Assembly (NCBI GenBank): GCA_951804945.1
Contig: OX638153.1
Coordinates: 20,584,001-20,648,000 of the forward strand
From: Podarcis cretensis
Taxonomy: Eukaryota
Length of the DNA: 64,000 nt
Direction: 5' to 3'
Shown here: positions 8,529 through 62,146 of the stretch, piece after piece
Layout of the letters: the number at the start of each line of letters is the position of its first letter
Position numbering within the stretch: position 1 is the first letter of the stretch
Made by a program: the position numbers and the translations under genes
Notes under the pieces: generated by a model
What the model was told of the DNA's origin: nothing
What the model saw: the letters and a program-made list of their open reading frames with translations, nothing else
Databases searched by the model: none

Positions 8529-8852
8529 TTTAAAGGCTTTGGCCCTGTATGCCTGAAGGAGCATCTCCACCCCCATCATTCAGCCCGGACACTGAGGTCC
8601 AGCTCCGAGGGCCTTCTGGCAGTCCCTCATTGCAAGAAGTGAGGTTACAGGGAACCAGGCAGTGGGCCTTCACGCCTGCCCTGTGGAATGCCCTCCTGTC
8701 AGATGTCAAGGAAAGAAAAAACTATCTGAGGAGGTTTTTAATCTTTGATCTTTTACTGAGGTTTTATAATTTGTTGGAAGCCACCCAGAGTGGGTGGAGC
8801 AATTCAGTCAGATGGGTGGCACATAACTAACTAACGAATGAACGAACGAACG
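8529..8852 (+). mobile_element. L2 3' fragment, same family as the full-length element
   Basis: Encodes GFGPVCLKEHLHPHHSARTLRSSSEGLLAVP, matching the L2 ORF C-terminus; 3' UTR stem; AACT/AACG tail. Confidence 0.88.
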
Positions 8853-11800: not shown

Positions 11801-14800
11801 GACTTACTCATTGGAGTTAAACACAAATCGAAAGCTCCCAGTCTATTCGGATGAATAGATCAGGCACTTTTGGTTTGTGTTTTTGGTTTTGTGAGTTTGA
11901 TGGTTGAATGAGAGTGGATAATTTATTATGTAATTTATTATTTCTTAATCACAACATGATCAGCGGATATGGCTGCAACTTAGATTGTGATGAAGCCTAT
12001 TTGCAACAAAAGACACCTATGTGAATGAGTTAAAGGACAGTATGAAATAAGGAAAGGTTATTATTTTGAAGGGATCACGCTCCAGCTGAATTTATTTCAT
12101 CTTCAATGACAGCCAGTATTTCAGCATGGAATTTCTATATACAGTCAAAAGTGTCTGGCCTGGTGTTAATTGTTCTGTCTGAATTAATATGGCCAAGTTA
12201 TTTATTGGAACAGAGCAATCAGACCCAGCTGCTGACTGTAGCATGGGGGGCCCATTTCAATTAACAGGCCTATCTTCCCAAAGGAGCAATTGCATGAAAT
12301 GAGCAGCAGGCATACAATGAAAACAGAGGGGGTGGGTGACTGCCGTTTGGAGAACAAAGATAGTGTTTTGTGCAGGATAGAAGATAATCAAATACATCCT
12401 TTGCTGCACCAGCTTACCTTTTGTCAAACTGGGGATAAATTTCAATTTGAAAACCAAGTACATTTACTAGCTTCATGGAAAATCTGAAATGCTGATGGGA
12501 CAAAAGTCATCTTCTTTGTCTGAGGTCTGAAACAACTGGCTGGACAACTAACTAAATTGTGAGCATGCTCAAAAGTTATGCTCAAAAATGAATATATATT
12601 TTTTGCATAACTTTTGCTGCCTTATGCCCTGTGTTTTCTTCTTTAAGGGTCTACCCCTGGCCTTTACTCTGCTGTTTTGTAAATCTGTGTGTATTATATA
12701 TGCCAGGTTTTGCTGGTGTGGTCACATTGGCATATGCCACTATACTAGTGCTATACTGGGAGGTATGCCTGGCTGACATATTTAGCACCTGAGGTTGTGC
12801 CATTGGACTGATTTAACAGTGCTTGTATAAGATGAAGTTCAATTTTAGAACACCCCATTTGTCTTGGGGAAATGTCTACAGTCCATTAGAAGTGCTCTTG
12901 ATTCAAAGAAGTAGGCATTATTCACTCCACTATGCCTTTTGTTGTTACTTTGACTCATTGATGATATAAAATTCCCCAGGGAGCTATTAATCCTTCTGCT
13001 ACTGAAATGTTAGTAAATTTTGGTACATAGGGCATCACCTTCCTGCCTTTTATAGCACTGATAGTTTGTTGTGTCTCATCTCATAGCAGCATATTGCTTT
13101 TCTCATTAGGAGCTTCGATGTGGCCAATTTCATTGGCTTTTTCATTTGTGCTTCTTTAAAATCATGTTCTCTGGTGAATTATGAGCCAGTAAAACACTGG
13201 CTCTTTGATCAGAGCACATGTGTCTGGGTGGTTGTTCAAGAATACTGCAATATTATACATTCCAAGCAATACAAGCACACTAGGTGTCAAGATGTAATTC
13301 AAGTTGTGCCTAATCAAAAGCACTGTACAACTTCATCTCTTGTCAGTTTTGTTTTTATTGGGTTAAATAAATGGGGATTAAAATACTCAACACAGTACAG
13401 TCAAACAGGAATAACTAAGCAAAATGGAAGACAGAATGCATTATGAACTTTTTAATGGTTTCAAATATGATGGCCCTGTCTTTCTTAATAGATAGCATTA
13501 TTTGTTAAGTACTCAAAGAGCTTCACAAACACGATCCCTACAACTACGATGTAATTAAAACTGGTACAATTATCACTACATTAGGGGTTATTTTGTGTTT
13601 GCAGGTGTGAGAGAGAGACAGACAGAGAGAGACAGAGACAGAGAGAATGGCTTGCCTAAAGCCATTTAAACTACAAACATACTTGCTTTATTGGGGGTAT
13701 TTCTTATTGAATTAAATGGGACTTACTTCTGAGTACCCATTTATTTATTTTATACAGTAGAAACTGTTCTATATTCTGAGAACCAACAAGAATTTAAAAC
13801 TGCAGAAATAAAATAGACTGATTTGGATGGGCTTGGGAGCAAATAACAGTCTTCAACCAAAAAAACACCCATGTTGGGCTTGCAGAGAAATGGTGCCACA
13901 GTGCTTTCCCAGAGGAACATATGGCACCATCAACAAATCTTCATCCACAGAACTCAGCGACCAGGAAGGGGTGCAGGGGGAGAGATGACTTCTCAGATAT
14001 TATCCATATCCATTTGATTGCATTGTTGGTGAGTTTGTTGCTGAGATTTGCCATTGTTGCCACTTGCCCAGGTGAAGAGAAACCTTTGCTCTCTTTGGAC
14101 ACTAATATATTGTGTTTCGCATGCCTGATGTTTGGTAGTAGTAAACTTCCAGTAAAGGTTTGAGGGACACTGTTCTCCTGTGGCTACCGTGAGCTTGGGG
14201 AGGCAGCAACAGCAACAATAGTCTGAGGAAGAGGACTGTTTTTCCTTACTGTTCCCTCAGTGCTTCCAGCAGTGTCCTGCAGCAAGCGGTTCAGAAGCCA
14301 GGAGCTGCTGATTCCATCTGCTCAATGAGACTTGCAAGCCTTTTGAAAGAGGGTAAATGGAACTGTAATGAAAATTTTAGAATTAAGAGGTTTAAAATGT
14401 TATGATAGTTTAGACAATGTCATGGAATTGAGACAACTTCTTAGGGGGAAGAGGAAACAGGGATGATCCAGGTCACCCTATGTGCATAGCTAATATACAG
14501 TTTAAAAATAATCTCTTCCATAAGTTTAAAAAGACATGAGCAGATTCGATCCATTATAAAACGAGGCAATTGTATATTGAGTTGAATGTCGATAGAATCT
14601 AAAATTCAAGTGATTCAGTCAAGCAAATAATCAGGATCAGAAGTAGCATTATATTTAACAGATAAACACACTACTTTTGTGAACAGATTGTATGGTATTC
14701 CTCTAATTATATCCCTTTTTAAATTTCAGATATCCAAATGGCTTGCAAATACTGTTGATGTTTTGCTCTGAGACTCAGAAAAGCTTTGTAGTTCCTCTTA

Positions 14801-22283: not shown

Positions 22284-22360
22284 ATTTTCTCTCACCATCA
22301 TGGTTTTTCTGAACTGTGGAGGCGGGGGCTACTGGTTCTTTGAGCATGCTGCGTGGAATG
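22284..22360 (+). CDS. HGSNAT: HGSNAT-like exon (equivalent to human exon 8)
   Basis: ccctttcag|...|gtagg, 77 bp. Encodes (G)FSLTIMVFLNCGGGGYWFFEHAAWNG, matching human [27 protein letters not shown] including the N258 and H269 equivalents. Symbol denotes the family; likely a paralog. Confidence 0.93.
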
Positions 22361-23261
22361 GTAGGGGACAACTTCCCATTGCATTTGCTGCATCCCTAAG
22401 CACTTTATACAAATCAGCAAACTCATTATTGATCTCCAAAAGAAACAGGAATTAATATGGCCTACCATATCCTCTGTAGGTAAAGAGTATTTAACAATGA
22501 ACTCTGCTTAAACTTCATAAAAGCCTCTTCAGCAAATCAGCAGGAAAAAATATTGATCTTAAAATAAGCATGTGAATGCTAATTGTATTTTGCCTTTCCA
22601 CTGGAGGACCATTACTTTATTTAGCTGGAGTTCATCCTTTAATTTTATTGTCTCAGTGCATTGTCTATGAGGCCATTTTCTTTAGGTTTAAGCAAGGTCT
22701 GTAACAGCTCCGTTTTGCTGACCCTTCCTTTTTTGCAAGGAGTATATTGACTTCTGAGAGCTAGAGAAGCTTTTAAGATCATGTTACAGTAGCCCCAATC
22801 TGAGTTACATATTGTGTAACAATGGTTTCCTGTTATTGGGCTCTCAGTTAAATGGATTAGCATGATGCCAAGTACAATAATTGCCTCGCTCTGTATTTTA
22901 GCTCAGAAATCAATTGGCGGTACTTCTGAACTGCCATCTTCATAACACAGGCTTTAATTACATGCACAGTTTAATCTGGGAAAACCACACGTCTTTTCCA
23001 GTCCTGCTTCAGTCACGAGAGTATTGGTTTGGTGGATCTCCTCTTACAACTTGTCAACGCTCAACAAATGTTTCTTGAAATATTCCTCTGTCCCTGCCAA
23101 TTGGCACTGGCCCACTGACTCTGTGAAACAAAGTTAGATATATCTTCATCACTTTTGTGTTGTGAAGTTACTGAACAGGGAAAAGAGCATACTAGAAATG
23201 AAGGGTCATTCATTTCATATTATGTTGTCCTCACTTACTAATGTGTATGTGGACTGTGGTA

Positions 23262-28136: not shown

Positions 28137-28297
28137 GTTTGTTTTCATCATTGGCACATCAGTAGCACTGGCTTTCCATGTGATGATGAAAAGAGGAGTG
28201 AGCCGTATCCAGCTCTTGCGTAAATTGACCTGGAGGACTGTGATCTTACTCTTGATGGGACTCTGCTTCCTTAACTATGGACCAAGAGATGGTCCAT
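28137..28297 (+). CDS. HGSNAT: HGSNAT-like exon (equivalent to exon 10)
   Basis: ttatag|...|gtaag, 161 bp. Encodes FVFIIGTSVALAFHVMMKRGVSRIQLLRKLTWRTVILLLMGLCFLNYGPRDGP. Confidence 0.92.
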
Positions 28298-28486
28298 GTA
28301 AGTATAATTGCCTTTCGGTCGTTAGTGTTTTTATCATACAATCACGTACAATATCCACACTTATCTTTCCTCCGTGCTTTCCAGGCATGGCTTGTGCTTT
28401 AAATCTCTATGGCCAAGTGCCCCCTGCTCCCCCCTTTTTTTGCTGTGGGGCATTGCTGGCCCTGCCCCCAGTGTCTCTGTGCAGTT

Positions 28487-33212: not shown

Positions 33213-33993
33213 GTCCTAGTGAGGCCTGTCAGGCCCCGCCCTGGGCCAGGTGGTAAGTGGCAGGAAGGAGCAGGACCCTCAGGCACTCAGGGGAGTCCTC
33301 CTGGGCAGCAGGCAGCAAGCAGCAAGCAGTCCTTGTGAGGCTTCAGGCCCCGCCCCAGGCCAGATGGTAAGTGGCAAGAGCAGGGCCCTCAAGCACTCAC
33401 TCAGGGGAGTCCTCCTGGGCAGCAGGCAGCAAGCAGCAAGCAGTCCTTGTGAGGCTTCAGGCCCCACCCCAGGCCAGATGGTAAGTGGCAAGAGCAGGGC
33501 CCTCAAGCACTCACTCAGGGGAGTCCTCCTGGGCAGCAGGCAGCAAGCAGCAAGCAGTCCTTGTGAGGCTTCAGGCCCCACCCCAGGCCAGATGGTAAGT
33601 GGCAAGAGCAGGGCCCTCAAGCACTCACTCAGGGGAGTCCTCCTGGGCAGCAGGCAGCAAGCAGCAAGCAGTCCTTGTGAGGCTTCAGGCCCCGCCCCAG
33701 GCCAGATGGTAAGTGGCAAGAGCAGGGCCCTCAAGCACTCACTCAGGGGAGTCCTCCTGGGCAGCAGGCAGCAAGCAGCAAGCAGTCCTTGTGAGGCTTC
33801 AGGCCCCACCCCAGGCCAGATGGTAAGTGGCAAGAGCAGGGCCCTCAAGCACTCACTCAGGGGAGTCCTCCTGGGCAGCAGGCAGCAAGCAGCAAGCAGT
33901 CCTTGTGAGGCTTCAGGCCCCGCCCCAGGCCAGATGGTAAGTGGCAAGAGCAGGGCCCTCAGGCACTCACTCAGGGGAGTCCTCCTGGGCAGC
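33213..33993. repeat. 114-bp tandem repeat, about 6.8 copies (L2 5' monomer array)
   Basis: Period 114 (ATGGTAAGT at 33364, 33478, 33592, 33706, 33820, 33934). Near-identical units with a CCCGCCCC/CCCACCCC variant; the ORF-proximal unit is degenerate. Confidence 0.97.
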
Positions 33994-35277
33994 CCAAGGG
34001 AAGGGAGAGAAATGAGAAGGAACTAAGAACTTGGCACTTAGATTAGATATGTTTGTGACTTTTTTATTTTTATTTTTTTGCAAATCTCTGCACTTCAGTA
34101 CTGCAGGATAGCCAGTTCCAAGTGCTGAGTACTTATGGAGCCATTGTGGTATCAGCTTTCAAATCCGATCTCCACCCCCGAAATGCATTATGTTCTTGAC
34201 AGTTGCCCTTTTAAATCCACAGTGCAGTGCAGTTGGGGTCACACATATTTCTTCCTAACCACGAGTTTCTGCTTTCTTTAAAGGAAGAGCTTAATAATGG
34301 AAGCCTTAATAAAGTTCTGTATTTGCAGGATTCTGAAGCTGGATAGATGTATGGTTTCCTCTGTAGAGGACGGCACTGTGGGAGGGTGGTACTGTATTCA
34401 GATAGGTTTTCTTCAGAGTGTTGGCATCCATCTGTCTTGGGAGGAGCGCGCCTCTGTATAGCAGGGCAGGATATAAGAGACAATGGCTGTCTTAAAACCC
34501 CCAGTCCAACTCAAAATATTCAATTAAATATATTTTCCTTCAGCTTCTAGCATAGACATTTCATCCATAGCAATGCTAACTGCAATGCTTCTTCTTCTTC
34601 TTCTTCATCATCATCATCCTTGCGTTCCTTTTACAGGATTTACAGAGCAAACTCAGGCCTGTTTGCTTAGAAGTACTACGGTGTTTAGAGGACTATGTTT
34701 CCCAAAGGTGTGCAGAAGACTATAACGAAAGTCACTCCCATTGCTCTAAAAAGCACCCTACTTCAATAAGATTATCAACAGCTGACAGTCCTAAACCTAA
34801 AAGAAGCTTTAGTCTAGTGAATAAGATTAGGAAAGGGACGTGAATAATTTCTGGCAGAACAAACAACGTTGAACATCACCTTAAGTAGAGTATAAATGGA
34901 CTGCATTTCTGAAATGTAAAAGTATTTGGGCATACCAGCAGGTTCCAGTGTTAAAAAGAATTTACTGTAGCTAACAATGAATTCAGTGTTTGAGAAAGAT
35001 ACTTGGGCCTGGGAAAGTTTTGTCTGCTTGCAGTTTTAGCAGAGGACACTAATGGGTTTGAGACAGCATTGAGACAGCATTTAAAAGGGTGTTTGGATGA
35101 ATACCTTGCCTTATGATTTGTGTTGCCAAGGAAACAGGGTGTGGAATTGCCTCCATCAGACCCTAGGCCTTATTCCATCTGAATAGGGCCTAGGGTTTGA
35201 TGTATCCACATCTCAGTTTCTTACCTGTAAAATTCATGTCATTGTGACTTACTTCAAAGGGATAATGGATTGTACAG

Positions 35278-38711: not shown

Positions 38712-38996
38712 ATCTAGAAGTCTCATACTGCCTGTCAACTGCAAAGGCTATTCTTGCACCCATGTATTCTTTACTATGCCTGAAGAGGCTTCTGGGACCT
38801 GAATGCACACAATTACTGGACTCCAAGCCTTAATCCATAAGTTTCTTGGTATTGGAACCAAATCCTTGATGCATCTGATTACTCAGTAATTTTGGGCCAA
38901 ATAGAAAAATATGTAACATGCATGATTGCAAATCATGTACTGGAATTTTTTTCTCAGATTAGGTATTATATGTAACATTCTGCTTTGTACTTACAG

Positions 38997-39109
38997 TGTC
39001 GTGGAGCTGGGCAAGGATTCCAGGTGTTCTGCAGCGTCTTGGATTTACTTACTTCATTTTGGCTTTGATGGAGACCTTCTTTTGCTTAAAAGACCTTGGC
39101 AGATATCAG
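38997..39109 (+). CDS. HGSNAT: HGSNAT-like exon (equivalent to exon 11)
   Basis: ttacag|...|gtgag, 113 bp. Encodes LSWSWARIPGVLQRLGFTYFILALMETFFCLKDLGRYQ with the family motif RIPGVLQRL. Confidence 0.93.
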
Positions 39110-42940: not shown

Positions 42941-44023
42941 GGAGTCAGGAGTAGGTAACTATAAAACACCTGGTGTCAGTAAAGTCAATTCTTTATTCAA
43001 AGAAACCAAAACAGTGCAGGCCTAGTGATCCCAGCAACTGTTCCCAATCGGTCTTTCTTGCCTCTGTGAGGCAGTTGTGAGGACTGATGTCCCCAACATC
43101 CCACCACTCTCCAAGACTCCTCCCCTGGTTGCTTCCCTATCAGCCTAAGGACCTTTTTATTGTCTCTCATTGCTTTGCCCTCTTCATTCCTCTCTGTGTT
43201 CTGGGAGACCAGCAGGCAAGGGAGCTGGTCACAGCAGGAGAGGGAGAATCTCTGGCTTCTTCAGCAGCCTGCCTCCACTCTGCTTCTTGACCCACCTCTG
43301 TTTCTGCTTTTGAGCTGCTCTCTGCTACAGCCTCTTCCTGCTCACTCAACCCTGTTGCCTTTTCATCTTCCAACACCTTCTCCTCCCGGTCTACTACTTC
43401 TTCTCCCTCTGACCACTCACCATCATGCCTCCCATCACTCCCCTGGCTCTGAGCCTTCATCCTCTGGGAGTTCCTCTGGGAGTTCTCCTGCTGGTGCTTC
43501 CCACCACTCATCTGCATCCAGCCAGTCCATGACACATACTGAGAGCATAGTAGATTGCATTGCCTATTGTCTGCACAACAAACTTTCCCCTGGTTAGCAC
43601 ATGGGAGATGAGATGAATAAATTTCTCTCTTTTTTTGAGGGCATATTGCACACAGCCTGAACACATGCAAAATCACTGACCTAGTAGCTGGACAACTGCT
43701 TGATAAAAATGACCTTATGGCTTTTTATGAGCACTCAGCATGCTCACTCACCCTCTCTCCGTAGGTATGCGTAGGATTTGATGGATTTTCTTCAGGGTTT
43801 TTTGCATGTGAATCAAGTGACGGAGACAGGAAGTGGCTAACATTCTAATTGCTGCTTTCACTTTCATGTAGTTAAGAGAGCAATTTCCTACTGATGTATA
43901 TAAAGGTGGGGGAAGAAAACCTTTGGGGGTTAAAGAGTGGTTCTGACCCACATTCTTCTGGAAGTGGCCATATTTAATTTCTTGACCGTATCTCTGATCT
44001 TGTAAATTTCCTTCTCTTTTAAG

Positions 44024-44148
44024 TTTGATAACCGGTGGGCTCCACTAAGGGATATTGTTCTCTACTGGCCGGAGTGGGTAATCATGGTGATCCTGGAGAC
44101 CCTTTGGCTGTGCCTCACATTCCTGCTACCTGTCCCTGGATGCCCCAG
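44024..44148 (+). CDS. HGSNAT: HGSNAT-like exon (equivalent to exon 12)
   Basis: cttttaag|...|gtaag, 125 bp. Encodes [41 protein letters not shown](R). Confidence 0.92.
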
Positions 44149-45579
44149 GTAAGCAAGTCTGAATGCACAGTAGAGTAGAATTTTCGTAATGGAAAAAAGG
44201 GCATTCTATAAATGTATTTGTAAAGGTCTTATTCACTATCATGAAAGGTCATTTTCTAAACAACCTATTGTATGAAGGGTACATAACTCCAAAAAGAGGC
44301 CAATGGTTTTACCCATTTCCCAGGTGATAGGATATTCTCTGTGTACTCCCCCCCCCAACAGGATCTTTTTCTTTGCAGTGAGAGAGAAAGCACCGGAGGC
44401 TCATAGCATCTTTGTAACATCTGTTAATTTGCAAGCACACAATTATAGCTTATTGAAAACAAGCAGATTCAGAGAGCGGGCAGCAAGTGCCAATCCTGAA
44501 TCCCAAAGTGTGACATCTGCATCCTACTTCTGCCAACGCCAGCAAAAAAACTCCCATCTTTCCATCTGTCTCAGTTTAAATGGCAATTGCTGTATTTTCT
44601 GCCACACACAAACACCACTTGTCAGGTAGATCTTCCGTTAAGGAAATATATTCCAGTTATTATCTCCAATTGAGAAAATATCAGCTGGTTAGCAAGCCCT
44701 GACCACTGGTCAGGTGACAGAAGGGGGCCAATGGAGTTGCAACTGGTGCTCAAAAGCTTTTAATTCTGAGTGGGCTGCTCAGATTCAGTGCAAACTGCAC
44801 CCTGAGTGTCTGCCCCCTGACTATCCATGTTCCTCTTTCCAAGCCCATTTGCTTTCCAGTTTGATTGTTCGGTCAATATCTACTTGAGTTCAGACAGCCA
44901 GACCTGGTAGAAACATACCTTTGCATTAGACTTGCTTCCATTTACAATCCATGTTGGAAATAATTGGACCCTAAAGAACCCTCCACTCCCATTCTAAGTG
45001 ACACCTGCCAGGCAGTCATTTTTAATGCCCAAGTGTATTATTCTCCAGTACACTGAGCCCTTTCCCCAAGTCCAGTTAAAAAACATTTGAGAGCTCTTCT
45101 GTCCCAGATTCAAGTCAGAATCTCACCTCTCACTGTCCTTAGGGTTGTGCTGTCAGTTCTCATTTCTTTGGACAGAAAATTGAAGGGCAGTGTCGGTGGT
45201 GTTAAATTTCAAATCCCAATTTTGGAAATGAGTGAATTTAGCCCCCTTAAAACCCTATTCTTTGGGAATTGCAGAAGAGGGAACAGGGCTGGCTTGCTGT
45301 GACTGATACATAACTAGTAATATACGCTGTCGGGTTTTTTTGGCTGTGGTTCCCAAGCTCTTTCATGTACCCCAGGACATGCATCCTTTAAAAAGGCACT
45401 GGCAAGGCAAGGCTGTCATATGCTATGTGTCCTGCTGTTTTATCATTTAAAATAATGATCTAGCCATCAGCAGACACAGCTTGAGGTGCATGCAAGGGAT
45501 TGCAGAAGAGCTGTGTGAAATAGATGTATCAGTTTGTGTTTTAGCATGGGAACATTTGCATGTCTTAGTGAATAAGGCA

Positions 45580-45674: not shown

Positions 45675-46837
45675 ATATTGCTACCTCTTAACAATTCCCC
45701 CTCCCGTTACTTAAAACGAAGCAGAATAATTTTCCCCCCTTGCAGATAAATGCTGCTGTTATCTTAAAACAACAGAAGTGAAAAAGAAGCCAATCTTCTC
45801 TTTCGTGGCATGTGAAGAGAGAGGAAAAAAACTGTGTAGGAAGAGTTATTTATGGGAAACAATAACGTCCCCCTACGCCATTACTGGTACTATGACAGTA
45901 ATTTAGATTTTGCATCAGAATCTTACAAGTTTTGCACTAAGGGGAGGTTGAAGAAACTTTGGGTTGTTTCCCCATTTCTTAGTACCACACAAGTCAATGG
46001 AATGATAAAGTTGACTAGATTATGCTAGAAATAATATTAGGTCTCACACAAATTTTGCTGTTTTTTTTTTTGGGGGGGGGGAATTATCTAATAGTTCAGA
46101 GGGAAGGATTTTTTTAAAAAAAAGGTCTACCAGAGCACTTTCAATTATGTGGCTTTGAACCTGCCCATTTACATAATAAAAAGTGAAATGATAATTAAAA
46201 ATACATGCAAAACTGCTCCAGGCATAGAGGTGGCGGGGCGGGGGGAGGAAGAGGAGAAAGGAAACAAAGAACATGTTATAGGTACTCAGGGGCACTATAG
46301 GTGCCTATACTAATCATACCAAGACATACACATTTCTGTAACAATCCCACTTTTTGCATCTGGCGTTGAGCTTTCTAAGATGCAGCTTGGAACTGAGAAT
46401 TATGAAAGACCAAAGTCTGTCCCCGAGAGGAGAAGAAAGCAATGGTGTGTGCTTGAGGAATCTTACACGGGCGTGGGGCGTGGGGCGTGGGGCTCCCATA
46501 TGCCTTTCCTAACCATAGGAACAACTAATGAAAAGGTTCTCTCTAATACACAGCAAAGGGTCCTGGAGAAATCAGTTGCTGGTTGACCAATCCTCTCCAT
46601 TTGCACTTTCCCCTATTTCCATGTTTGGAAACCCTGAGTTAACCACTGCAAACTGGACGATGCTGTAGATTTCAAAATGTTGCCAGATCAACACAGCTCT
46701 TTGCCTCCCCATTTGCAAGGAGGCAGGATCACATCCTCACATCGACTGAACTCCCTGCCTGCATATTATGCAAAGTTCCTCCCAATTTAACTCATATTTC
46801 ATCTTTCTCTACTCAACACCATCATCTAGTTACCCCA

Positions 46838-47056
46838 GTTACAGATAGGTAGCCGTGTTGGTCTGCCATAGTCAAAACAAAATAAAAAAATTCCTTCCAG
46901 TAGCACCTTAAAGACCAACTAAGTTAGTTCTTGGTATGAGCTTTCGTGTGCATGCATGGTATCTGAAGAAGTGTGCATGCACACGAAAGCTCATACCAAG
47001 AACTAACTTTGTTGGTCTTTAAGGTGCTACTGGAAGGAATTTTTTTATTTTGTTTT
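46838..47056. mobile_element. Palindromic Penelope-like (PLE) non-autonomous insertion
   Basis: 83-bp inverted arms (46874-46956 and 46974-47056, 1 mismatch); GGTAGCCGTGTTGGTC leader typical of squamate Penelope ends; 14-bp TSD ATCTAGTTACCCCA at 46824-46837 and 47057-47070. Confidence 0.8.
46957..46998 (+). ncRNA. Minimal type I hammerhead ribozyme motif (Penelope-type)
   Basis: UGGUAU-CUGAAGA-A-GUGUG(CAUG)CACAC-GAAA-GC-UC^AUACCA: helix I 6 bp, helix II 5 bp, palindromic AGCU helix III. Predicted cleavage after C46992. Confidence 0.75.
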
Positions 47057-48553
47057 ATCTAGTTACCCCATTAGAAAATGAAGTATTTTGAAGCACATTA
47101 GATTCTTTGAAACTTTTCTTCTTTCTCTGGGTAAACTTTGTAGAGTTTCTCTACTGCTTGCACCTGCATGTTAGCAAAGATTTTTAATATGAGATACAGA
47201 GAAAGTCAATAGTTATTTGTTTATACATTTCATTGTACACACCATACTTCTGCTGCAGAATTGATTTAAAGCTGGTGGTGATTGGTTGTCTATGAATGGT
47301 AGAGAGAATTTTTGCAAAATTGCTTGCAACAGGAAGTTAGCGTTCAGGTTCTTCTGATGCACCCGAAGTGCAATAAAAAGGACTTGTGACACCTTGATTT
47401 CAGTTGATTGGGAGGAAATGATATGCCACAGAAATACAATAGATAGAAAGAAGTGTTCTTGAAAGTGTAAAAAGATGGATGCAGCTTGTTCCTCCATCTC
47501 AGATTGCTCATGACAGAGTGTGATTCTTTAATCTCTTTCACTCCGTGGAAGCTAATATGTGGCCATAAATCACACACATCAACTTCTCGAGGAATAAAAC
47601 ACTCTTTTTCCCAATGAACATTGGACCACGACCCTGAACTATTTAAGAAGAAATGCATGCTTTCATACACAGAGGTTTAACATGGCCATGTTGGCCGTGA
47701 CTCATTCTTCATTTAAGGCTATGATCCTGACCCATTCTTCATTTTGCATCATTTGTTGAAATGGTGTACCTGCCACCTTTTAAAAAGTTAAATTAGGAGA
47801 AGCCTAGCTGAATGAATTTTCAATACCCAGAACTCCTATGTTTTCCACTCTAAGCACTGACAATCTGGTACCAATTTCATGCACATATGTGCAGTTGTAT
47901 TAGTGGAATCAGCTTAGCATAAAGTGAGTGATGGAATATGCATTCTACACGCTCTTAGAAGCTGTGCAGAAACTGCAGCTGGGGAGATGTGTGAAAAACT
48001 AGCTCCATGTTTTCAGATTAAGTTTTCTATAGCGCCAGTCATAGGCAAATGGAATTAAGTTGATTTGTTAAGTTTGTAGGATTCTAGGGAGGGTGTTCAT
48101 TCTCACAAGAGTTGGTGAACCACATTAGTGGTTTTTTGCAGCGAGCCTTAAGGAGTGGCTCATCCTCCTGATGACTTTATGAAATGCACCTGCAATTTAG
48201 ACACAACATGCAGAATTTGCAAACATACTAACTATAATGTTTGCTAAGTCTACTGTGTGCCTCACAAGGCAAGGTCCTGCATTTTCCAAGTAATGCTGGA
48301 GACAGATTTGAGTAACTGCTGGTTTGCAGTTTGCTAAGGGTGAGTAACCATTGCCTCTTTGCTCTAGTATTTCTTACTGCAACCCAAGATCGTTTTGCTG
48401 CAGGCAGAGTCTAATTTAGTTAAGTGAGCATAAAATCTCCCATGTTCCATTTTAAGAGTGTTAGAAGCAGCAGGCTAGGCTTCCCCATTGCCCAGCAACA
48501 CATTTTTCTTAACCATTTCTTGCATAAGAACCAGCTAGAGGATGGGTTCACAT

Positions 48554-48690: not shown

Positions 48691-49411
48691 GAGATGAACA
48701 CAAATGCCTGCTCACTACCATGTGGGTTTTAGTTTGTCTTTAAAAATGCTATTATACCTCTATTGCCACCCACAGCTATATAGTGCAGTTGCAGCCCTGC
48801 CAACAGGTAAACAATACCTGTTTTCTGCTTACTAAGCAATATTTGAAATTTGAGGGTTACATTCTGAGTGTATATACTTTCAGTGAGTAAAAGCTAAAAT
48901 TTTGTTTTGTGGAAAAATGCAGCTTTGTTGGGGATGAATCCGCACAGTAAATATTGACACAATAGAACCGGTTTTATATTCTAATCATGATATCATCCTC
49001 CACTGTTTTCAGAGACGGAAAAAGCAAAGACACATCAAACATTTGAATTAGTAGAGATGTGTTTTGTAGATATTTTGCGGCAGATGGTACATCTCAATTA
49101 GGGAAGCATGTTTTCAGATTGCCGTATTCTAATGCATTTTAAAAATTATATCCCATTCTGGGGGAAGATCAGAGAGGCAACAAAAACCGTGATTGCCAGA
49201 ATTAACAGGGCTTTTTGGCTTTCAGAGATCAAAAGGATCATTACACTTAATGGTGCATGTGTAGTAAATGCTATTCAGGAGTTGAAAATAAGCTCACTAA
49301 TTCGTTTTCAAATTCTTGTCATATCAGACTGGTCTTGTGACGAAAAATAAAATCAGTTCCGGTGCTTGGAAAACTGACAGCTGCAATTAATATTGTGTGT
49401 TCTCTCTGCAG

Positions 49412-49538
49412 AGGTTACCTGGGCCCTGGGGGGATAGGAGATGATGGAAAATACCCCAACTGTACTGGCGGTGCAGCAGGGTACATTGATAAGTTGGTGC
49501 TTGGAGAGGACCACATATATCGCTACCCTACATGTAAG
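49412..49538 (+). CDS. HGSNAT: HGSNAT-like exon (equivalent to exon 13)
   Basis: tctctgcag|...|gtaat, 127 bp. Encodes [42 protein letters not shown]. Confidence 0.95.
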
Positions 49539-51132: not shown

Positions 51133-53432
51133 AGGAGGACTGTTAGAGGCCCGTTAAAATCCTCTTGATGGCTGTATGTGGCTTAGCAGTCTACCAGCTG
51201 GCCATTTTTGAATAGACAGAAGAAGAAAGCAAACTAGCATGTCAAACACAGTGGTGTTTAGATCTGTCATTGGGTGCCTTGTCTACAAACAGAACTACTG
51301 GCACTGGCAATAAAATGCTTTCTATCTGATACTTTGGAGGCCTTAGACAGCAACTAGTTTTCTTAAGAGGGTCAGGGCGCAGGCTAATGAGTTACCAGTT
51401 TTCCCATAAAGTGGCTGCAGTAAGCCCATCCCTTCCTCTGCCGTTCTGATGAGGCAGTTGGCTTCTGGAATGCTGAAGGAACGCCGTTGCTGCGGTGATG
51501 CTAGGAACAGGAGTGGCAGACGGACAGAAGTAAAGACAGTTGTGGGAAGAAAGCAGGCAGTGAAAGGAGGCTGAGTGGCAGCGTGGGACTAAGAGCCTAA
51601 CCCGGTGACAATGCTATGCTGGCAACTCTCACAAACTACATTGGCTGCTCTCTCCATGTTCCTTTTTAACCTCTGGATTGGCAAGTCAGAGAGGCTAGGT
51701 TCGCCTCAAGGACAGCTATTCAACAGTTCTTACTGTCAGAAAATTGTAGATTTTTAGTTCTGTATACATTTTTGCTCAATTGCTCTGTGGAATGATTTAG
51801 ATGGCTATGCACTAAAAGGCAGCGAAGTACAGTAAAATTCTAGGTATATAAGGATCAGGGAGCAATAGGAAGCTCTGGGAAGTTTGTTGGTCTTGAATCT
51901 CCAAGCGGGCTGACTTTTCACAACCCTGTATCAGAACAGTGGCCCATCTAGTTCAGAATATTTATTAATCCTGGCTAGCAGTGGGTCCCAAAATTGTCCC
52001 CCCCATCTGATATCCTTTAACTGCCAGTGCCACAGAATTGGCCAAGGACCCAATATCAGGCAAGGATGTGCTCTTGGTGAAAATCAATCAGTATTTTAGT
52101 GCAAAATTTTTCTCTCTCTTTGCAATTTTGCTTAATATGCAGATTTTTGCAAAGCAATTTCCCTAATATAGTGCACCCACCCTGTTATTTTCACTAATAC
52201 ATGTATCTTATGCACACTTTTCTGGCGTACATGTGTTTTTATACATGTTACTTGCATGTGTGCAATGATTTGAGATCAGTAAAGCTGGAAAGACTTGAGA
52301 GGGGACCTCTTTTTCCTCATTCCCTGCTTTTAGTTGACACTTCTCCCCGCCAAAAACCCCCCATAACTGGTATTGTCAAAATTTCTGCAAAAGTAGATAC
52401 ACAATCTTAGTTTGAAATCTTACTGAATTCTGAATATTCATGGCATCTCTACGAGCTGGTGATCTGTAGTGTCCAGCAGTAGCATAAGGCAAATTTTGCT
52501 GTGTCCAATAAATATATAATGAAGTTGAAATATATAATAGTAGAGTGTTCCCTCATTATGGATGGATGGATGCTGCAGATTGTCAGCTTCCCATATAGCT
52601 GCTGTAAACCTCCCAAGAGTTTAAAAACACTTTGTGAAAAAAGCTGACTGGTAACCACCACATGTCTCAAATCTGTAACTAGCCTGCCATTTCTATGGGC
52701 AACTTGTTGAGGCTTCTGTGATTATTATTATTATTATTATTCACATAATTTCTATACCGTTTTATATGTTATGTTCTTAACCACAATGCTATATGAACTG
52801 CTATCAGTGTTACAGATTTATGTGATGCCTGCTTATTCCTAATGTTATTGTTTTTGTTATTGCTTCAAAATAAATCGGGGGAGGGGGGATGAAATGAAGT
52901 GAACAATTATATAACATCTGTATTTGTATAATCGCTTCAGAGAAAAGATTTGGATCAGCAGCGAACATTGGGGTCTCAAATTTCAGGGGTGCGCTGTGCC
53001 ACACCAAAATTCATCCACCGCCCACCTCTCATACCCCATTTTAAATCATAGTTGTGGTGTCCCTTGCAGCCCCCCCCCCAGGGCCCAGGCCCAGTGCAAC
53101 CAAACTGGTTGCGCTTCCCTAAATCTGCCTCTGTTTGGATGTCTTTGGTATAGAAATGGTAATTTATTTTAAAAAGGGAGTTACATTTTTCTGGCACAGG
53201 ATAAATGAACAAATGAGCCGGCTGCCTCTGAACTTCTTGCATTAATGACTGTGTTTGATTCAATGAATAGATATGCATATTTAAGGAAGTGAGACAATTT
53301 GGATGTATGCCACATTGTCTTATGTGGCCAACATTTATTTTGTGACCTGTAATATTGTAAATTGAGAGGCTGCCTGCTGTTTTAGATCTTGGGAGTTTTG
53401 AGTAACCAAAGCAATGTTTTCTTTCCTGTTAG

Positions 53433-53519
53433 GAGCTGTACAAAACCACTCAACCTTTTGATCCTGAAGGCATTTTGGGTACAATCAACTCCATTCTGAT
53501 GGCTTTCTTTGGACTTCAG
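53433..53519 (+). CDS. HGSNAT: HGSNAT-like exon (equivalent to exon 14)
   Basis: cctgttag|...|gtaat, 87 bp. Encodes [29 protein letters not shown] (DPEG motif). Confidence 0.94.
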
Positions 53520-54386
53520 GTAATTTGACGTGTTAAAAGTGCTGTGGTCAATGCACTGTACACACGAGGTTCTTTTGGATTCACATGACCAGATTTTCCT
53601 CATCTCACACAGTAGCAGCCATGGGCAGCTGGGTTGTGAGAAGGTACACTCTACACTGTAGAATGGATGCCTCCCTTAGCTTTGTTGGTGTGTGTGATGG
53701 GCAAGGGACAGTAATAGGACCAGTTTGCAGAGCTATTTGAAGCCACCAGCTGGTTATGGAACAATGGAGGAAGGGCAGGTACATGGAACAATATTGTTCA
53801 CCAGAGACAAACTGCACATGATGGATGTGCAGTCAGGTGGATGTGACCCCTACGTTTTTACTCATAGCCACAGTAAAAAGCAGCAGTCTGTTCCAGATGT
53901 TCATGCTGAGAGGAAGGGGCTGCTTATCCCGTTACCTGTGGGTGTTTGATCTCATTAAAATTATCCTGTCTTGAACTGTCCCCCACCCCCCATTGGATGG
54001 ATACTCATCTCTTCCCTGCATGGAGCAAAAGGCAATTCAGATGGGGGAAAGTAACAAATTCCACCATCCTGCTAGCCCTCCACACTCATGTACTTCCCAC
54101 AGCTGCTTCGGGTATTTTTAAAAAAATACATTTGGGAAAAAAACAATTACTTGGCTGAGCATCATATGTAGCTTGACGCTTGAAAAGCATATCCCCCAGT
54201 GAAGAGATGATGGTACACTCTGTTCCCGCTATTGCATTCCCTAGGAATGAAATCTGTCTCAATGTTGTGTCAGAACCAGACCAGAGGCCAAAGGGATTTA
54301 TCTATTAGTCTGATGTCGGAAAGTGGTTCTGAAAGGGGATCATCCTCAGGCACATCAGTAGAACTTTATGTGGGGGACAGTTATGA

Positions 54387-54420
<34 letters not shown>

Positions 54421-54612
54421 GTAGTAGTAGTAGTAGTAGTAGTAATAGTAATACCCTACCCATCTAGCTGGGTTGCCCCAGCCGCTCTCGGTGGCTTCCA
54501 ACACATATAAAAACGTCAAACATTAAAAACTTTCTGATACAGATACCTTCAGATGTGTTCAGATGTGTTCTGAAAGTTTTGTAGTTCTTTATCTCCTTGA
54601 CTTCTGATAGGA
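54387..54612 (-). mobile_element. L2 3' tail fragment with a compound (ATA)n(GTA)n tail
   Basis: CCCATCTAGCTGGGTTGCCCCAGCCGCTCTCGGTGGCTTCC matches 29862-29902. Confidence 0.8.
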
Positions 54613-54941
54613 TGGCAACACTTTTCCTCTATAGGAGTGGTGTTTTTTAATGTACCCTAAATATGTTTCTTTGTTTTTCTGTCCCATCTTTCCTCAAATA
54701 GAGAGCAGCTCCCATGGAATTTCCTAGTAGACCCCCATCTGTATACTACTAGCCAGATTCAGACTTGTGGTGTTGAACTTCAACAATGGAATACCGCATG
54801 TTATTCTTTGGGTCCAGAAATGTTGATGTTGAAAGAAAGATCTGCAGGCAGGAATCTGCAATTATTTAGCATCCTGCTTTTGAGTCTTTCCTGCATAATC
54901 CTTGTGGATTTTTTCACTGCAGGGCAACATTTTCCATATGG

Positions 54942-55102
54942 CAAAAGCAACCAAGAGTCCTGCAGCTCTGTAAAGACCGACCAATTGATGGTGGCATAAG
55001 CTTTCCTGGACCAGAGTCCATTTCATCAGATGCCACAATCAATTTGTTCATCTCTAAGGTGCTGCAAGACTCTTGGTTGCTTTTGTTGCGATGGACTAAC
55101 AC
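54942..55102 (-). mobile_element. Older palindromic Penelope-like remnant with a degenerate hammerhead motif
   Basis: Imperfect arms CAAAAGCAACCAAGAGTC...GACTCTTGGTTGCTTTTG; minus strand 55036-54991 reads GUGGCAU-CUGAUGA-AA-UGGAC(UCUG)GUCCA-G-GAAA-GC-UU-AUGCCAC. Confidence 0.7.
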
Positions 55103-57391
55103 AATTAGTCCCTCTAGAAATATTTTATATGTCCAGTTCTCTGTGTAAGACACAAAGTTGCATCAGAAACAGCTTGTGTGGACCTTTTCACTTTGTGACC
55201 CTCCTGTCCCTTAATATTGCCTGTGAAGTGACTTTATGAGAAAAAAGAGGCCCAGCCATTTTGTGTATAAGCCCATAATGGATCAATAACAGAGAGTTGT
55301 TTTTTTGTTTTGTTTTTTTAAAAAAGGAGAGCAAGAAATCTTGTTTCTTTTTAGCATTTTTAAAAAAGATATTAATTTGTTTAGCAGATGCTGCACATCA
55401 TGAGAACATGAAGTAAACCGAGTAAAAAGCACGGCCTCTTTTGTATGAGATGTTTAAGAAAATTGGGTGTTTCGTAAATACATGGAAAAGCTGCTTTTTA
55501 AAGGCGTCTTTTATGGCTCCCTTGGTCAGAGGATAGTTACCCGTAGAATTTTGAAACCCAAAGCTCATTACAACTTTATGGGACTCTTGTTTCCTAATTT
55601 TATGAGCACAGTTAATTCTCAGGCTTCTATGAGGTGTCAGGTCTGTCAGCTGGGAGAGGCAGAGGGAGGATTACCAAACAAGTCTGAGAGGCTCGTTCCC
55701 CCACAATGTTCCTCACTGGCTCTCAGGACCCTTTCAGCGGAGTCCTCCTTCAGGACAGCTGCTGCCTGACATCATGGTGCAGGCTAGAATTCCCTGCAGA
55801 TGTTTGCTGTGTAATTTGCTGAGAGTGGTTTTTGAAACCAGCCGGGTATTGAGACTTCGGTCTTAACCAATTATTGCTCTTAAAGGAAGAGCTTTTCAAA
55901 GCTGATCAGCTTCCATGAGTCAAGTGAGGGAAAGGTACATATGAGATCTGCAGGAATGAAAAATAGTGACATACACAATGTGGGACCATTTGTCTGTTTT
56001 TGGCTCTTCGTAATTTCTACTCTGACTGGCAGTGGCTCTTCAGAGTTTGAAACAGAGTCATTCTCTGGAGTCATTCTGAGCCTGCCAAACTTTTGCCCTG
56101 ATCCTGCTATGTTTGTGTACAATAGGTTGTGTGCCTGTAACTCACAGATCATTGTTATGGTGCTGATCAGCTATTCAGGGTTGTAAGTCACTGTGGGTTG
56201 ACCAGGGCAAGATAAAATGACTAACAAATTTAATAAATAATAATAATAATAATTCAGGGAAGGAGCAGGCAGAGTGACAGTAACCAAGCCTCCACTTTCA
56301 AACAGCTTATTGAATCTCTCCCCAGTTTTCTGATTAGAGTTGGTTCAGAAAAGAAACCTTACATGTAACTGGTTTCACGCTTCTCCTTTGCCTACTTCTG
56401 TACTACACACGCTCTATAGATGTCTCTAGGTCTGCATGACTGATACAGTGCAAATGCTTATTTAGTGCTCCTGAGGAATATTTTTTATCTAATAATGGTG
56501 AGATTTTTTCCATTTGGTGGTTGTACTGATTTCTCCTTCTTTCTGAAGGTAATTAGGCCCTTTTTATTCTGCCTGCACTCAGTTCTCTGACTGTTATGGC
56601 TGAACTGTTAAGAATCTGCTCTTGATATTTGCAAATTTTGTAGTGCAGCAAATTTCTGCAATCCCTATTCAGTGATAAAGATGGTGAGATGTGTTGAAAA
56701 CTCTCTAATGGATAGCACTCACTTAGCCAATGCTTGTGGGGTGGCTCTGTGGGACATTTCCCTTATTTAGCCGTTTAAGTTATCTGGGGAGTATTCCATA
56801 GTAACGCTTATATTTTTTGTGCTTTGGCTGGGCCTCTATAAAGCATTGTAAAGTGTTAATGGTGAAAACATGTGCATTAAACATCCCAGTTTAGGTGTTT
56901 TATTTTTGTTCTCCTACATGTCATGCCTTCTTTCCAATGTTTTAGCTCCTGCTGGAATCAGTAAGGTAAAATAAGCTTCACTTTGACTGCTTAAATCCTC
57001 TTATTCCTAAAGAAACAGCTGCACAGTTGGTGATCATGTCCTGACCTACTGTGGCAGCAAACCTCACTGTTAATGACAGAGACCACCTCCTGGTGATAAT
57101 CATTACTAGTGCAGCACAGTTATTTGCTCTCTATTCCAGCAGAAGACTGTGGGCAGGCACAGATGTAGCGTTAGGGCTCTCTTAACAGCTTCCCTGCTGC
57201 ATTAGAGGGGCAAGATGTGTGCTTTGTATGTTGGTGTTAGTATTCTGTTCCACTAGCCCCCACCCCAACAGTATTCATGTATTGGCGATGCTGTTCTATG
57301 GTATCTCCATTGCCACTTGTAGGGTCACCTGCCTCAGTCTCACCTGCCTCAGATGTAATGGAGATATAGAGTTGGGTACCATCTCCATTAC

Positions 57392-61589: not shown

Positions 61590-62071
61590 CTGAGCTGTTA
61601 TATCCTGGCACAGGCTTCATGATGGCCCAGGCCTTGCTGGGAATGGAAAGGAACTCATGGGGCTTATGCTCTGGCAAAGAGCATTACATGTATTTATTTG
61701 CTTTTATTTTCTTCTAACTCGGCACACTTGCACATGTAGAGCAAAGCAAAAGTTAACATTGTGCACATTCTTCATAACGTTTATGGTATTTAAGTACAGC
61801 ATTCATCAGTTGCACTTTTTGCCCCTTGGGAAACTTCAGATGCATCTTTTGGCAGTTCAGGTGGTTGTTTACAGGGATCTCAAGGAGTTCTGAATCAGAA
61901 AGCAGTGTTGCCTACCTGAGTAGATCTTCATGAGTCTTCCCCTACCTGGGGATTCACATGGCAGAATCCTCCTCCACAAACAATTTTCCTGCAGACAGAA
62001 AATTAGTATGCCAGAGATAAGGCTAGGCTTCAGTTCTATACCCTGACATCCTAGTTTTCTGTCTACAGGAA

Positions 62072-62075
<4 letters not shown>

Positions 62076-62146
<71 letters not shown>
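62076..62146. repeat. Compound (GT)n-(GA)n microsatellite
   Basis: Read directly. Confidence 0.95.

What the first reader, a model, noticed from the sequence alone, without database searches (positions are those of the whole stretch)
46824..47070. 219-bp palindromic Penelope-type mini-element with an intact minimal hammerhead on the host pre-mRNA strand and its own antisense arm
Seen: a clean insertion (14-bp TSD ATCTAGTTACCCCA) with 83-bp inverted arms (1 mismatch). Spanning the centre on the + strand is UGGUAU-CUGAAGA-A-GUGUG(CAUG)CACAC-GAAA-GC-UC^AUACCA, which has the complete hammerhead core and a palindromic AGCU helix III. Established: Penelope-like elements carry minimal hammerheads proposed to act as dimers through that palindromic helix III. 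Inference: the ribozyme is transcribed within HGSNAT-like intron 12. The upstream arm is complementary to helix II, GAAA and the cleavage site, so the RNA has two mutually exclusive folds (long hairpin = off, hammerhead = on). This could be a self-silencing ribozyme retro-element that a host intron tolerates.
Basis: partly seen in the sequence, partly recalled or inferred. Interest (0 to 1): 0.8.

Follow-up and report, generated by a model that had tools for sequence, protein, structure and literature searches.

The report
Young Penelope-type fold-back insertion
This is a recent 219-bp insertion of a very abundant lizard Penelope-like retrotransposon, laid down as two inverted copies in an intron of the HGSNAT-like gene. 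It carries that family's usual minimal hammerhead motif, so it is an ordinary member of a known kind and not a new self-regulating ribozyme.

Summary
There is a 219-bp element (46838-47056) between perfect 14-bp target duplications, with 83-bp inverted arms (1 mismatch). A complete minimal hammerhead motif lies on the + strand (46957-46998), which is the sense strand of an HGSNAT-like gene, and the element sits in an intron.

New evidence: contigs of three related organisms run straight from 46823 to 47057 with one copy of the 14-mer. This empty site shows the insertion is real and young. Thousands of contigs per run match the element alone, so the family is very high-copy. Those contigs end at the element's own boundaries: one outer end with an extra 36 nt "tail" and one without.

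An inverted 5'-truncated copy, a 30-40 nt tail at one end only, a variable target duplication and a minimal hammerhead together form the published signature of Penelope-like elements. In vitro, the Anolis Penelope-like enzyme cuts and extends both target strands from two internal start sites, which explains this anatomy.

The "switch" is not supported. Forcing the hammerhead fold costs about 37.5 kcal/mol against the hairpin, no partner for a dimer lies nearby, and cleavage is untested.

The scan has reported this kind of element before, elsewhere in this genome.

The parts
46824..46837 (.). Left copy of the 14-bp target-site duplication (ATCTAGTTACCCCA)
   Evidence: Perfect direct repeat. Present once in the empty site of three related organisms (joint 46823->47057, 14 bases fit both sides).
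46838..46873 (-). 36-nt 'tail': an extra 3'-terminal extension, present only on the inverted copy
   Evidence: Has no partner in the right arm. Family contigs end at 46837 (61-72 per DNA run) and, alternatively, at 46875 or 47055/47057. This matches the optional 30-40 nt tail of Penelope-like elements (PMC8557442, PMC11167929).
46874..46956 (-). Inverted, 5'-truncated copy (left arm). Its sense strand is the - strand, and it breaks off inside the helix II palindrome of the hammerhead.
   Evidence: 83 nt complementary to 46974-47056 with 1 mismatch.
46957..47056 (+). Sense copy (100 nt), running from the hammerhead to the tail-less 3' end. Its first 17 nt (46957-46973) form the unpaired centre.
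   Evidence: In other family copies the sequence upstream of 46959 differs from this window (52-61 contigs per DNA run with loose letters before 46959), so this copy is itself 5'-truncated at about 46957-46959.
46957..46998 (+). Minimal type I hammerhead motif: helix I 46957-62/46993-98, core CUGAAGA 46963-69, bulged A 46970, helix II 46971-75/46980-84, GAAA 46985-88, palindromic AGCU 46988-91. Predicted cut after C46992.
   Evidence: Direct reading. Only descriptor hit in 64 kb. The 42-mer alone folds into helices I and II at -11.7 kcal/mol. The features match the Penelope minimal-hammerhead consensus (PMC4209133). No Rfam model matches. Cleavage not tested.
47057..47070 (.). Right copy of the 14-bp target-site duplication
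44018..44149 (+). Upstream HGSNAT-like coding exon
   Evidence: tblastn of homologues found. Matches residues 410-444 of the solved human HGSNAT, E = 1e-10.
49410..49538 (+). Downstream HGSNAT-like coding exon
   Evidence: Matches residues 446-485 of the solved human HGSNAT, E = 1e-18.

Best explanation
This is a young insertion of a very high-copy Penelope-like (PLE) retroelement family into an intron of the HGSNAT-like gene. It consists of two head-to-head cDNA copies of the same 3'-terminal RNA segment.

Inferred mechanism: the PLE endonuclease made nicks 14 bp apart on the two strands, and each exposed 3'-OH primed reverse transcription of PLE RNA. The + strand primer started at the outer initiation site, giving the arm with the 36-nt tail. 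The - strand primer started at the inner site, giving the tail-less arm. Both cDNAs stopped early, one inside hammerhead helix II at 46956 and the other at the 5' edge of helix I at 46957. Host repair then joined them.

The hammerhead is inherited baggage of the family. In a pre-mRNA it would be locked inside an 83-bp hairpin and is predicted to be inactive. Neither the hairpin nor the motif needs a host function.

Shown here: the insertion, its youth, the family's abundance and its two classes of 3' end, the strand and intron context, and the energetics. Inferred: the two independent priming events and the inactivity.
For: 1. Empty site. Single contigs of organisms B, C and E join 46823 to 47057 with one 14-mer, and their flanks differ from the window by only about 0.9-2.1%. 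Runs of organism A hold 95-98% of the sampled words.

2. Family. 8,500-13,300 contigs per DNA run lie on the element only. Summed depth is up to about 3 million there, against 16-47 on the flanks.

3. Two classes of 3' end. Contigs end at 46837 (with tail) and at 46875 or 47055/47057 (without tail). These are exactly this element's two outer ends.

4. Polarity. At both junctions, the strand that runs 5'->3' from flank into element is the antisense (cDNA) strand. That is what priming from both target strands requires.

5. Published signature of PLE insertions: an adjacent inverted 5'-truncated copy and a 30-40 bp tail, often at one end only (PMC8557442). The Anolis PLE enzyme cleaves and extends both strands in vitro and starts reverse transcription at two internal sites about 34 nt apart. 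The tail spans about nt 85-119, with the expected hammerhead cut at position 30 on the numbering of that paper's Fig. S2 (PMC11167929). Here the two ends lie 64 and 100 nt past the predicted cut.

6. The motif has the traits of the PLE minimal hammerhead: a base between A9 and 10.1, a G10.1-C11.1 pair, and palindromic 15.2/16.2 (PMC4209133).

7. A second, older fold-back of a related family lies at 54919-55176 with the same layout, the tail on the inverted arm only and a different inner junction. Its hammerhead keeps 11 of 12 pairs, with 3 compensatory double changes.

8. Forcing the hammerhead fold costs +37.5 kcal/mol against the hairpin.
Against: No autonomous RT/GIY-YIG partner of this family was seen. 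Only this window of the genome can be read, and the published Anolis Poseidon consensus is not alike in sequence on visual comparison, so the PLE assignment rests on architecture and motif.

The step 'two independent primings' is inferred from end geometry and from in vitro work on another PLE.

All runs laid were assembled contigs, so copy number, RNA ends and expression could not be measured.

A crude variation count does not show the hammerhead to be better conserved than the rest of the unit: 2 of about 40 sites against 7 of about 94 carry variants in at least 10% of depth in at least one of the four runs.

Thermodynamic prediction ignores helicases, proteins and folding kinetics.
Confidence: 0.8

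Rival explanations
1. One reading: the inverted arm is a selected feature of a self-silencing ribozyme element. The RNA toggles between a hairpin (off) and a hammerhead (on), and this makes sense-strand insertion in introns tolerable.
For: The left arm is complementary to helix II, GAAA and the cleavage site, so the two folds exclude each other. The element sits on the sense strand of an intron. A preprint reports that hammerhead retrozymes are depleted from introns in Xenopus (bioRxiv 10.64898/2026.07.22.740005), so some cost of genic insertion is plausible.
Against: The gap of 37.5 kcal/mol leaves no accessible 'on' state, and no hammerhead pair forms in the minimum-energy fold at any transcript length. 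The inverted arm is a general by-product of PLE integration (PMC8557442). In other copies it is joined at many positions, and the old copy differs too. The insertion is too young for selection at this locus. PLE minimal hammerheads cleave poorly, or only as dimers or with protein (PMC4209133, PMC11167929). No second motif lies in the 64 kb to pair with.
Confidence: 0.05
2. Snap-back origin: a single cDNA folded back on the 14-nt helix II palindrome and primed its own copy, so the two arms come from one priming event.
For: The inner end of the left arm lies within the perfect palindrome GTGTGCATGCACAC. The arms differ at only one base.
Against: A self-copied hairpin should have equal outer ends and no unique centre. 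Here one arm has a 36-nt tail that ends at a family-wide alternative terminus, and the other arm ends at the second family-wide terminus. Also, 17 bases in the centre occur in one arm only.
Confidence: 0.1
3. A retrozyme-type unit that is cut out at hammerheads and circularised into a small RNA.
For: It is a short non-coding unit with a type I hammerhead, and retrozymes are held to be non-autonomous PLE derivatives (PMC7229834, from its abstract in the list).
Against: Excision needs two hammerheads in direct orientation. Here there is one complete motif, and the other arm is inverted and lacks the 5' half.
Confidence: 0.03
4. A miniature DNA transposon (MITE) with 83-bp terminal inverted repeats, or an assembly artefact.
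For: Long inverted arms and a target duplication. Palindromes are a known type of assembly error.
Against: The outer ends are unequal by 36 nt, and the 14-bp duplication is longer than DNA transposons usually make (from general knowledge). Family contigs mostly hold single arms, or arms joined at varied points. Runs from three samples of organism A, all from one study, hold 95-98% of the words across the region, though one of them may be the source of the assembly.
Confidence: 0.02

Closest known systems
Penelope-like element insertions with an adjacent inverted 5'-truncated copy and a one-sided 30-40 bp tail (Evgen'ev & Arkhipova 2005 and Arkhipova 2006, as summarised in Craig et al. 2021, PMC8557442)
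   Same: Inverted 5'-truncated copy next to the sense copy. A tail of 36 nt at one end only. A target-site duplication. A hammerhead motif in the terminal region. Heavy 5' truncation.
   Different: Both copies are extremely short (119 and 100 nt), so the whole insertion is a 219-bp near-palindrome with no coding part. No RT/GIY-YIG gene of this family was seen in the window.
Poseidon_Ac (PAc) of Anolis carolinensis, studied in vitro by Frangieh et al. 2024 (PMC11167929)
   Same: The layout is a hammerhead, then about 55-64 nt, then two alternative 3' ends 34-36 nt apart. Both target strands are cut and extended in vitro, which predicts head-to-head insertions like this one.
   Different: I saw no sequence similarity to the published consensus, by eye only. 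In PAc the ORF starts at helix II. Here the ATG in loop II is followed by a stop after 9 codons. PAc prefers AT-rich ATT sites, which is not evident here.
Minimal hammerheads of metazoan Penelope-like elements (Cervera & de la Pena 2014, PMC4209133)
   Same: Full catalytic core, an unpaired base between A9 and 10.1, a G10.1-C11.1 pair, a one-pair helix III with palindromic AGCU, an open helix I, and no loop-loop contacts. That paper also reports paired motifs on opposite strands 100-700 bp apart, single truncated copies, and the motif's presence in reptiles.
   Different: Only one arm holds a complete motif. Helix I reaches 6 bp here partly because of the two bases at the junction (46957-58), which differ from the bases other family copies have there.
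Non-LTR retrozymes (Cervera & de la Pena 2020, PMC7229834; Li et al. 2026, bioRxiv 10.64898/2026.07.22.740005)
   Same: Short non-coding repeats with a type I hammerhead, related to PLE terminal regions.
   Different: Retrozymes are direct tandem repeats that release circular RNAs. This is an inverted pair with one complete ribozyme motif.

Membership tests
Penelope-like element (PLE) insertion | Insertion flanked by a target-site duplication, shown by an empty site | tested here: met
   14-bp perfect duplication. Empty site in contigs of three related organisms.
Penelope-like element (PLE) insertion | Inverted 5'-truncated copy directly next to the sense copy | tested here: met
   Arms 46874-46956 and 46974-47056, with the inverted copy truncated inside helix II. 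The feature is described in PMC8557442.
Penelope-like element (PLE) insertion | Optional 30-40 bp tail at one end, reflecting two alternative reverse-transcription start sites | tested here: met
   36 nt on the left arm only. Family contigs end at both sites (46837, and 46875 or 47055-57). PMC11167929.
Penelope-like element (PLE) insertion | Mobilised by a reverse transcriptase fused to a GIY-YIG endonuclease of the same family | not testable with these tools
   Only this 64-kb window of the genome can be read, and I did not search it for an RT/GIY-YIG ORF. The earlier-findings search for such a gene was blank. The published Poseidon_Ac consensus is not alike in sequence on visual comparison.
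Hammerhead ribozyme, PLE minimal type I | Conserved core C3 U4 G5 A6 N7 G8 A9, G12 A13 A14, A15.1-U16.1 and H17 | tested here: met
   CUGAAGA 46963-69, GAAA 46985-88, U46991, C46992. Descriptor scan.
Hammerhead ribozyme, PLE minimal type I | Helices I and II, a bulged base before 10.1, a G10.1-C11.1 pair, and palindromic 15.2/16.2 | tested here: met
   The 42-mer folds into a 6-bp helix I and a 5-bp helix II. A46970, G46971-C46984 and AGCU 46988-91. The criteria are those of PMC4209133. Against the old copy in the window, 23 of 24 pair cells are kept, with 3 compensatory changes, from only 2 sequences.
Hammerhead ribozyme, PLE minimal type I | Match to a curated hammerhead covariance model | tested here: not met
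   No Rfam hammerhead hit at the gathering score or up to E = 10, even on the 56-nt stretch alone. This is probably because the Rfam models expect a real helix III (my inference).
Hammerhead ribozyme, PLE minimal type I | Self-cleavage after position 17 | not testable with these tools
   Only contigs were available, so RNA ends cannot be seen. For the Anolis PLE, published RNA-seq showed no ends at the site, and cleavage needed the protein.
Non-LTR retrozyme | Two or more hammerhead units in direct tandem, so that a monomer can be excised | tested here: not met
   One complete motif in 64 kb. The second arm is inverted and lacks the 5' half.
MITE / DNA transposon | Equal terminal inverted repeats reaching both ends, and one fixed structure across copies | tested here: not met
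   The outer ends differ by 36 nt. Family contigs show arms joined at many different points.

The most novel reading that the evidence does not exclude
Fold-back insertion could be more than debris. By burying the hammerhead (and a sense-strand AATAAA) in a perfect 83-bp hairpin, it might make sense-oriented intronic copies harmless. Alternatively the hairpin might be edited or diced into small RNAs that act on the family or on HGSNAT.
Probability: 0.05. Interest if true: 0.6.

Novelty: new member of a known kind. Interest (0 to 1): 0.2.

Why it matters
This is a clean natural example, dated by an empty site, of what the 2024 in vitro work on the Anolis Penelope-like enzyme predicts. Both target strands appear to have been used as primers, and one event used both alternative reverse-transcription start sites. 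It also shows that the family was active after this lizard split from its closest sequenced relatives, and that it is present in very high copy number. It opens no new question about ribozymes: the hammerhead is the family's known motif, and here it is predicted to be locked in a hairpin.

Tried and rejected
1. Rfam. Nothing in the whole window reached a gathering score. Up to E = 10, the 501-nt stretch gave no hammerhead match, only generic long-hairpin matches to microRNA models far below their thresholds, and the 56-nt stretch gave nothing at all.

2. Other copies of the family in the window. None by blastn or pattern search. Only the older, diverged fold-back at 54919-55176 turned up.

3. 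Copies in public collections. An 18-mer from outside the hammerhead gave 22 metagenome and 2 viral loci, all chance matches of 19-24 nt. A proper family alignment and covariation test could therefore not be made.

4. Testing whether the arm mismatch at 47010 shows two different RNA templates. I rejected this. The laying tool sends most family contigs to the better-fitting left arm, so variant shares on the right arm are not family frequencies, and the right-arm T looks rare.

5. Preferential conservation of the hammerhead from the variant table. Inconclusive: 2 of about 40 sites against 7 of about 94 have variants in at least 10% of depth in at least one run. The CpG at 46984/85 decays in 4-16% of depth on the mirrored arm, and C46992>U in 3-26% of depth (10-26% in the three DNA runs).

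6. RNA evidence. No listed holder is on record as RNA. The run guessed to be RNA (X17, organism F) holds family copies inside longer contigs but none of the flanks, and contigs show no ends.

7. Earlier findings by sequence, and by the words GIY-YIG or HGSNAT: blank.

8. Exon numbering ('intron 12') was not verified. The exons were searched one by one by reference and were not joined into a spliced model.
Full report
**1. What is there**

- ATCTAGTTACCCCA occurs at 46824-46837 and again at 47057-47070.
- Between the two copies lie 219 bases (46838-47056).
- Bases 46874-46956 are the reverse complement of 46974-47056, 83 bases with one mismatch at 46920/47010.
- The palindrome is not symmetrical. 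The left arm carries 36 further bases at its outer end (46838-46873) that the right arm lacks. In the centre, 17 bases (46957-46973) occur only once.
- On the + strand, 46957-46998 reads UGGUAU CUGAAGA A GUGUG CAUG CACAC GAAA GC UC AUACCA. This holds every conserved hammerhead base, a 6-bp helix I, a 5-bp helix II and a palindromic AGCU in place of helix III.
- A descriptor for such minimal hammerheads finds this one site on both strands of the 64 kb. Shuffled sequence gave 0.01 hits on average.
- No Rfam hammerhead model matches, whether on the whole window, on 501 nt or on 56 nt. On the 501-nt stretch, only sub-threshold matches of the long hairpin to microRNA models appear.

**2. It is a real and recent insertion**

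Public runs of four further organism labels hold much of the region 46300-47600. I laid contigs of three of them on 46500-47400.
- In each, one contig (4,931, 4,832 and 2,324 nt) covers 46500-46823 and continues at 47057-47400, skipping 233 bases, with 14 bases that fit either side. This is the empty target site with a single copy of the 14-mer.
- The flanks of those contigs differ from the window at about 0.9% (organisms B and C) and 2.1% (organism E) of positions.
- Runs labelled as organism A hold 95-98% of the sampled words. One of them may be the sample the window was assembled from, so this is not fully independent.
- The insertion is therefore younger than the split from these relatives. 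An intact motif needs no selection at this locus to explain it.

**3. It belongs to a very large family with two kinds of 3' end**

- In the same call, 8,500-13,300 contigs per DNA run lay on the element and nowhere on the flanks. Summed word depth reached 1-3 million on the element, against 16-47 on the flanks. The tool warns that this is not a copy number, so I use it only to say that the family is very abundant.
- Contigs break away from the window at a few sharp places:
  - 46837, the outer end with the extra 36 nt (61-72 contigs per DNA run);
  - 46875 and 47055/47057, the end without it (14-39 contigs);
  - 46959, the start of the sense copy (52-61 contigs).
- The letters before 46959 resemble one another across runs over the last dozen bases. 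The family therefore continues upstream in longer members, and the sense copy here is itself 5'-truncated.
- Many contigs join points between 46860 and 46940 directly to about 46959. These are other fold-backs whose inverted arm has a different length.

**4. What this anatomy is**

Reviews of Penelope-like elements (PLEs) describe heavy 5' truncation, an inverted 5'-truncated copy directly next to the sense copy, and a 30-40 bp 'tail' often present at one end only (PMC8557442). PLE terminal regions carry minimal hammerheads. Their features are a bulged base before helix II, a G10.1-C11.1 pair and a palindromic 15.2/16.2, and they are proposed to act as dimers. They have been reported on opposite strands 100-700 bp apart, as single truncated copies, and in reptiles (PMC4209133). 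The motif here has all of these features.

Frangieh et al. 2024 (PMC11167929) studied the purified Anolis Poseidon protein and reported three things:
- it cleaves and extends both strands of the target;
- reverse transcription starts at two internal sites of the RNA, and the roughly 34 nt between them is the tail;
- the tail lies some 55-89 nt past the expected hammerhead cut.

Here the two outer ends lie 64 and 100 nt past the predicted cut after C46992. At both junctions, the strand that runs 5'->3' from flank into element is the antisense strand, as expected for a cDNA primed by the target's own 3'-OH. Nicks 14 bp apart account for the duplication.

My reading is therefore two cDNAs, one from each target strand. 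One started at the outer site and the other at the inner site. Both were truncated early (at 46956 inside helix II, and at 46957 at the edge of helix I) and were then joined head to head. The unequal outer ends and the unique 17-nt centre argue against a single cDNA that snapped back on the helix II palindrome. The two-priming step remains an inference. So does the family assignment, in that no RT/GIY-YIG gene of this family could be looked for outside the window, and the published Poseidon_Ac consensus is not alike in sequence on visual comparison.

**5. A second, older example in the same window**

- At 54919-55176, with the sense strand on the - strand, lies a 258-bp fold-back of a related family.
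- It has a decayed 16-bp duplication (54903-18 and 55177-92, 88% identical) and arms of 56 nt that are 82% complementary.
- A tail-like extension sits on the inverted arm only.
- A hammerhead-like motif runs from 55035 down to 54992.
- Its inner junction lies at helix I, not helix II, so the junction is not a fixed feature of these elements.
- Aligned with the young motif, 23 of 24 pair cells are standard pairs and three pairs changed on both sides. The core differs only at N7. The old copy also has an A/G mismatch at 10.1/11.1.
- With two sequences this is weak evidence (62 of 500 shuffles do as well), but it agrees with published covariation in PLE hammerheads.

**6. Gene context**

- Homologues found with one translated exon map by tblastn to six + strand exons: 22285-22362, 28138-28329, 38996-39109, 44018-44149, 49410-49538 and 53424-53525.
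- Three of these exons were searched one by one by reference. They match solved human heparan-alpha-glucosaminide N-acetyltransferase at residues 365-395, 410-444 and 446-485.
- The element lies between two consecutive coding exons, and its complete hammerhead is on the gene's sense strand.

**7. Does it work as a switch?**

- The full 219-nt RNA folds into the long hairpin at -150.7 kcal/mol.
- Forcing helices I and II with an open core gives -113.2 kcal/mol, which is 37.5 kcal/mol worse.
- With the left arm present, the minimum-energy fold contains no hammerhead pair at any of ten transcript lengths.
- Without the left arm, the sense copy does fold into the hammerhead helices.
- No second motif lies in the 64 kb to form a dimer in cis.
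- Published PLE minimal hammerheads cleave poorly alone. The Anolis one needed its protein, and no RNA-seq reads ended at its site.
- All runs I could lay were contigs, so RNA ends and expression at this locus remain untested.

**8. Conservation in the family**

- From the variant table, positions 46959-46991 show no variant at 10% of depth or more in any run.
- C46992>U reaches 10-26% in the three DNA runs (about 3% in X17). U is allowed at position 17.
- 46998 varies.
- The CpG at 46984/85 decays in 4-16% of depth on the mirrored arm.
- Outside the motif, seven sites vary, some at 20-64%.
- Two of about 40 sites against seven of about 94 is no difference.
- The tool also places most contigs on the better-fitting arm, which biases the shares.
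A census of the assembly would settle it.

**9. Verdict**

The element is an ordinary, young, very short fold-back insertion of a high-copy Penelope-like family that carries the family's known minimal hammerhead. The self-silencing idea is not supported.

Earlier notes of this scan describe the same kind of fold-back elsewhere in this genome, and two follow-ups reached the same verdict. I took those as leads only.

It is of modest interest as a natural illustration of priming on both strands from two start sites.

Noticed in passing
window 54903-55192 (element 54919-55176, sense on the - strand): An older, diverged Penelope-type fold-back. It has a decayed 16-bp target duplication, 56-nt arms that are 82% complementary, a tail-like extension on the inverted arm only, and a hammerhead-like motif (55035 down to 54992) with an A/G mismatch at 10.1/11.1. 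A further CTGATG-containing fragment lies near 55158-55167. It sits antisense to the HGSNAT-like gene, in the next intron but one.
   Followed up: partly
window 46971-46984: Helix II plus its loop (GUGUGCAUGCACAC) is a perfect 14-nt palindrome. Two 42-nt motifs are predicted to pair along their whole length as a symmetric duplex dimer (-40.4 kcal/mol) rather than through the AGCU of helix III.
   Followed up: partly
window 46857-46864, 46912-46919 and 47011-47018: In the sense RNA with tail, GUUGGUCU is predicted to pair with AGACCAAC of the AC-rich tail (8 bp), bracketing the inner reverse-transcription start site. It may correspond to the 'AC-rich stem-loop' start site reported for the Anolis PLE. 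Not tested for covariation.
   Followed up: partly
window 46881-46886: The left arm puts a canonical AATAAA on the sense strand of the HGSNAT-like intron. It would be buried in the hairpin. No evidence of use.
   Followed up: no
window 33223-34023: Long open frames on both strands with a repeated peptide pattern, pointing to a tandem array of roughly 114-bp units. Another note of this scan calls it the 5' monomer array of an L2 LINE.
   Followed up: no
window 54380-54470 and 62060-62140: Simple-sequence runs, seen as homopolymeric or alternating peptides in the translations (runs of I/V/L/Y, and HT/VC/RE repeats).
   Followed up: no
run X17 (organism F, guessed to be RNA), laid on 46837-47057: 1,023 contigs of a sixth organism label hold copies of this family inside longer contigs (up to 2,456 nt among the listed pieces) and none of the flanks. 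The family therefore extends beyond the closest relatives and may be carried in transcripts there.
   Followed up: no
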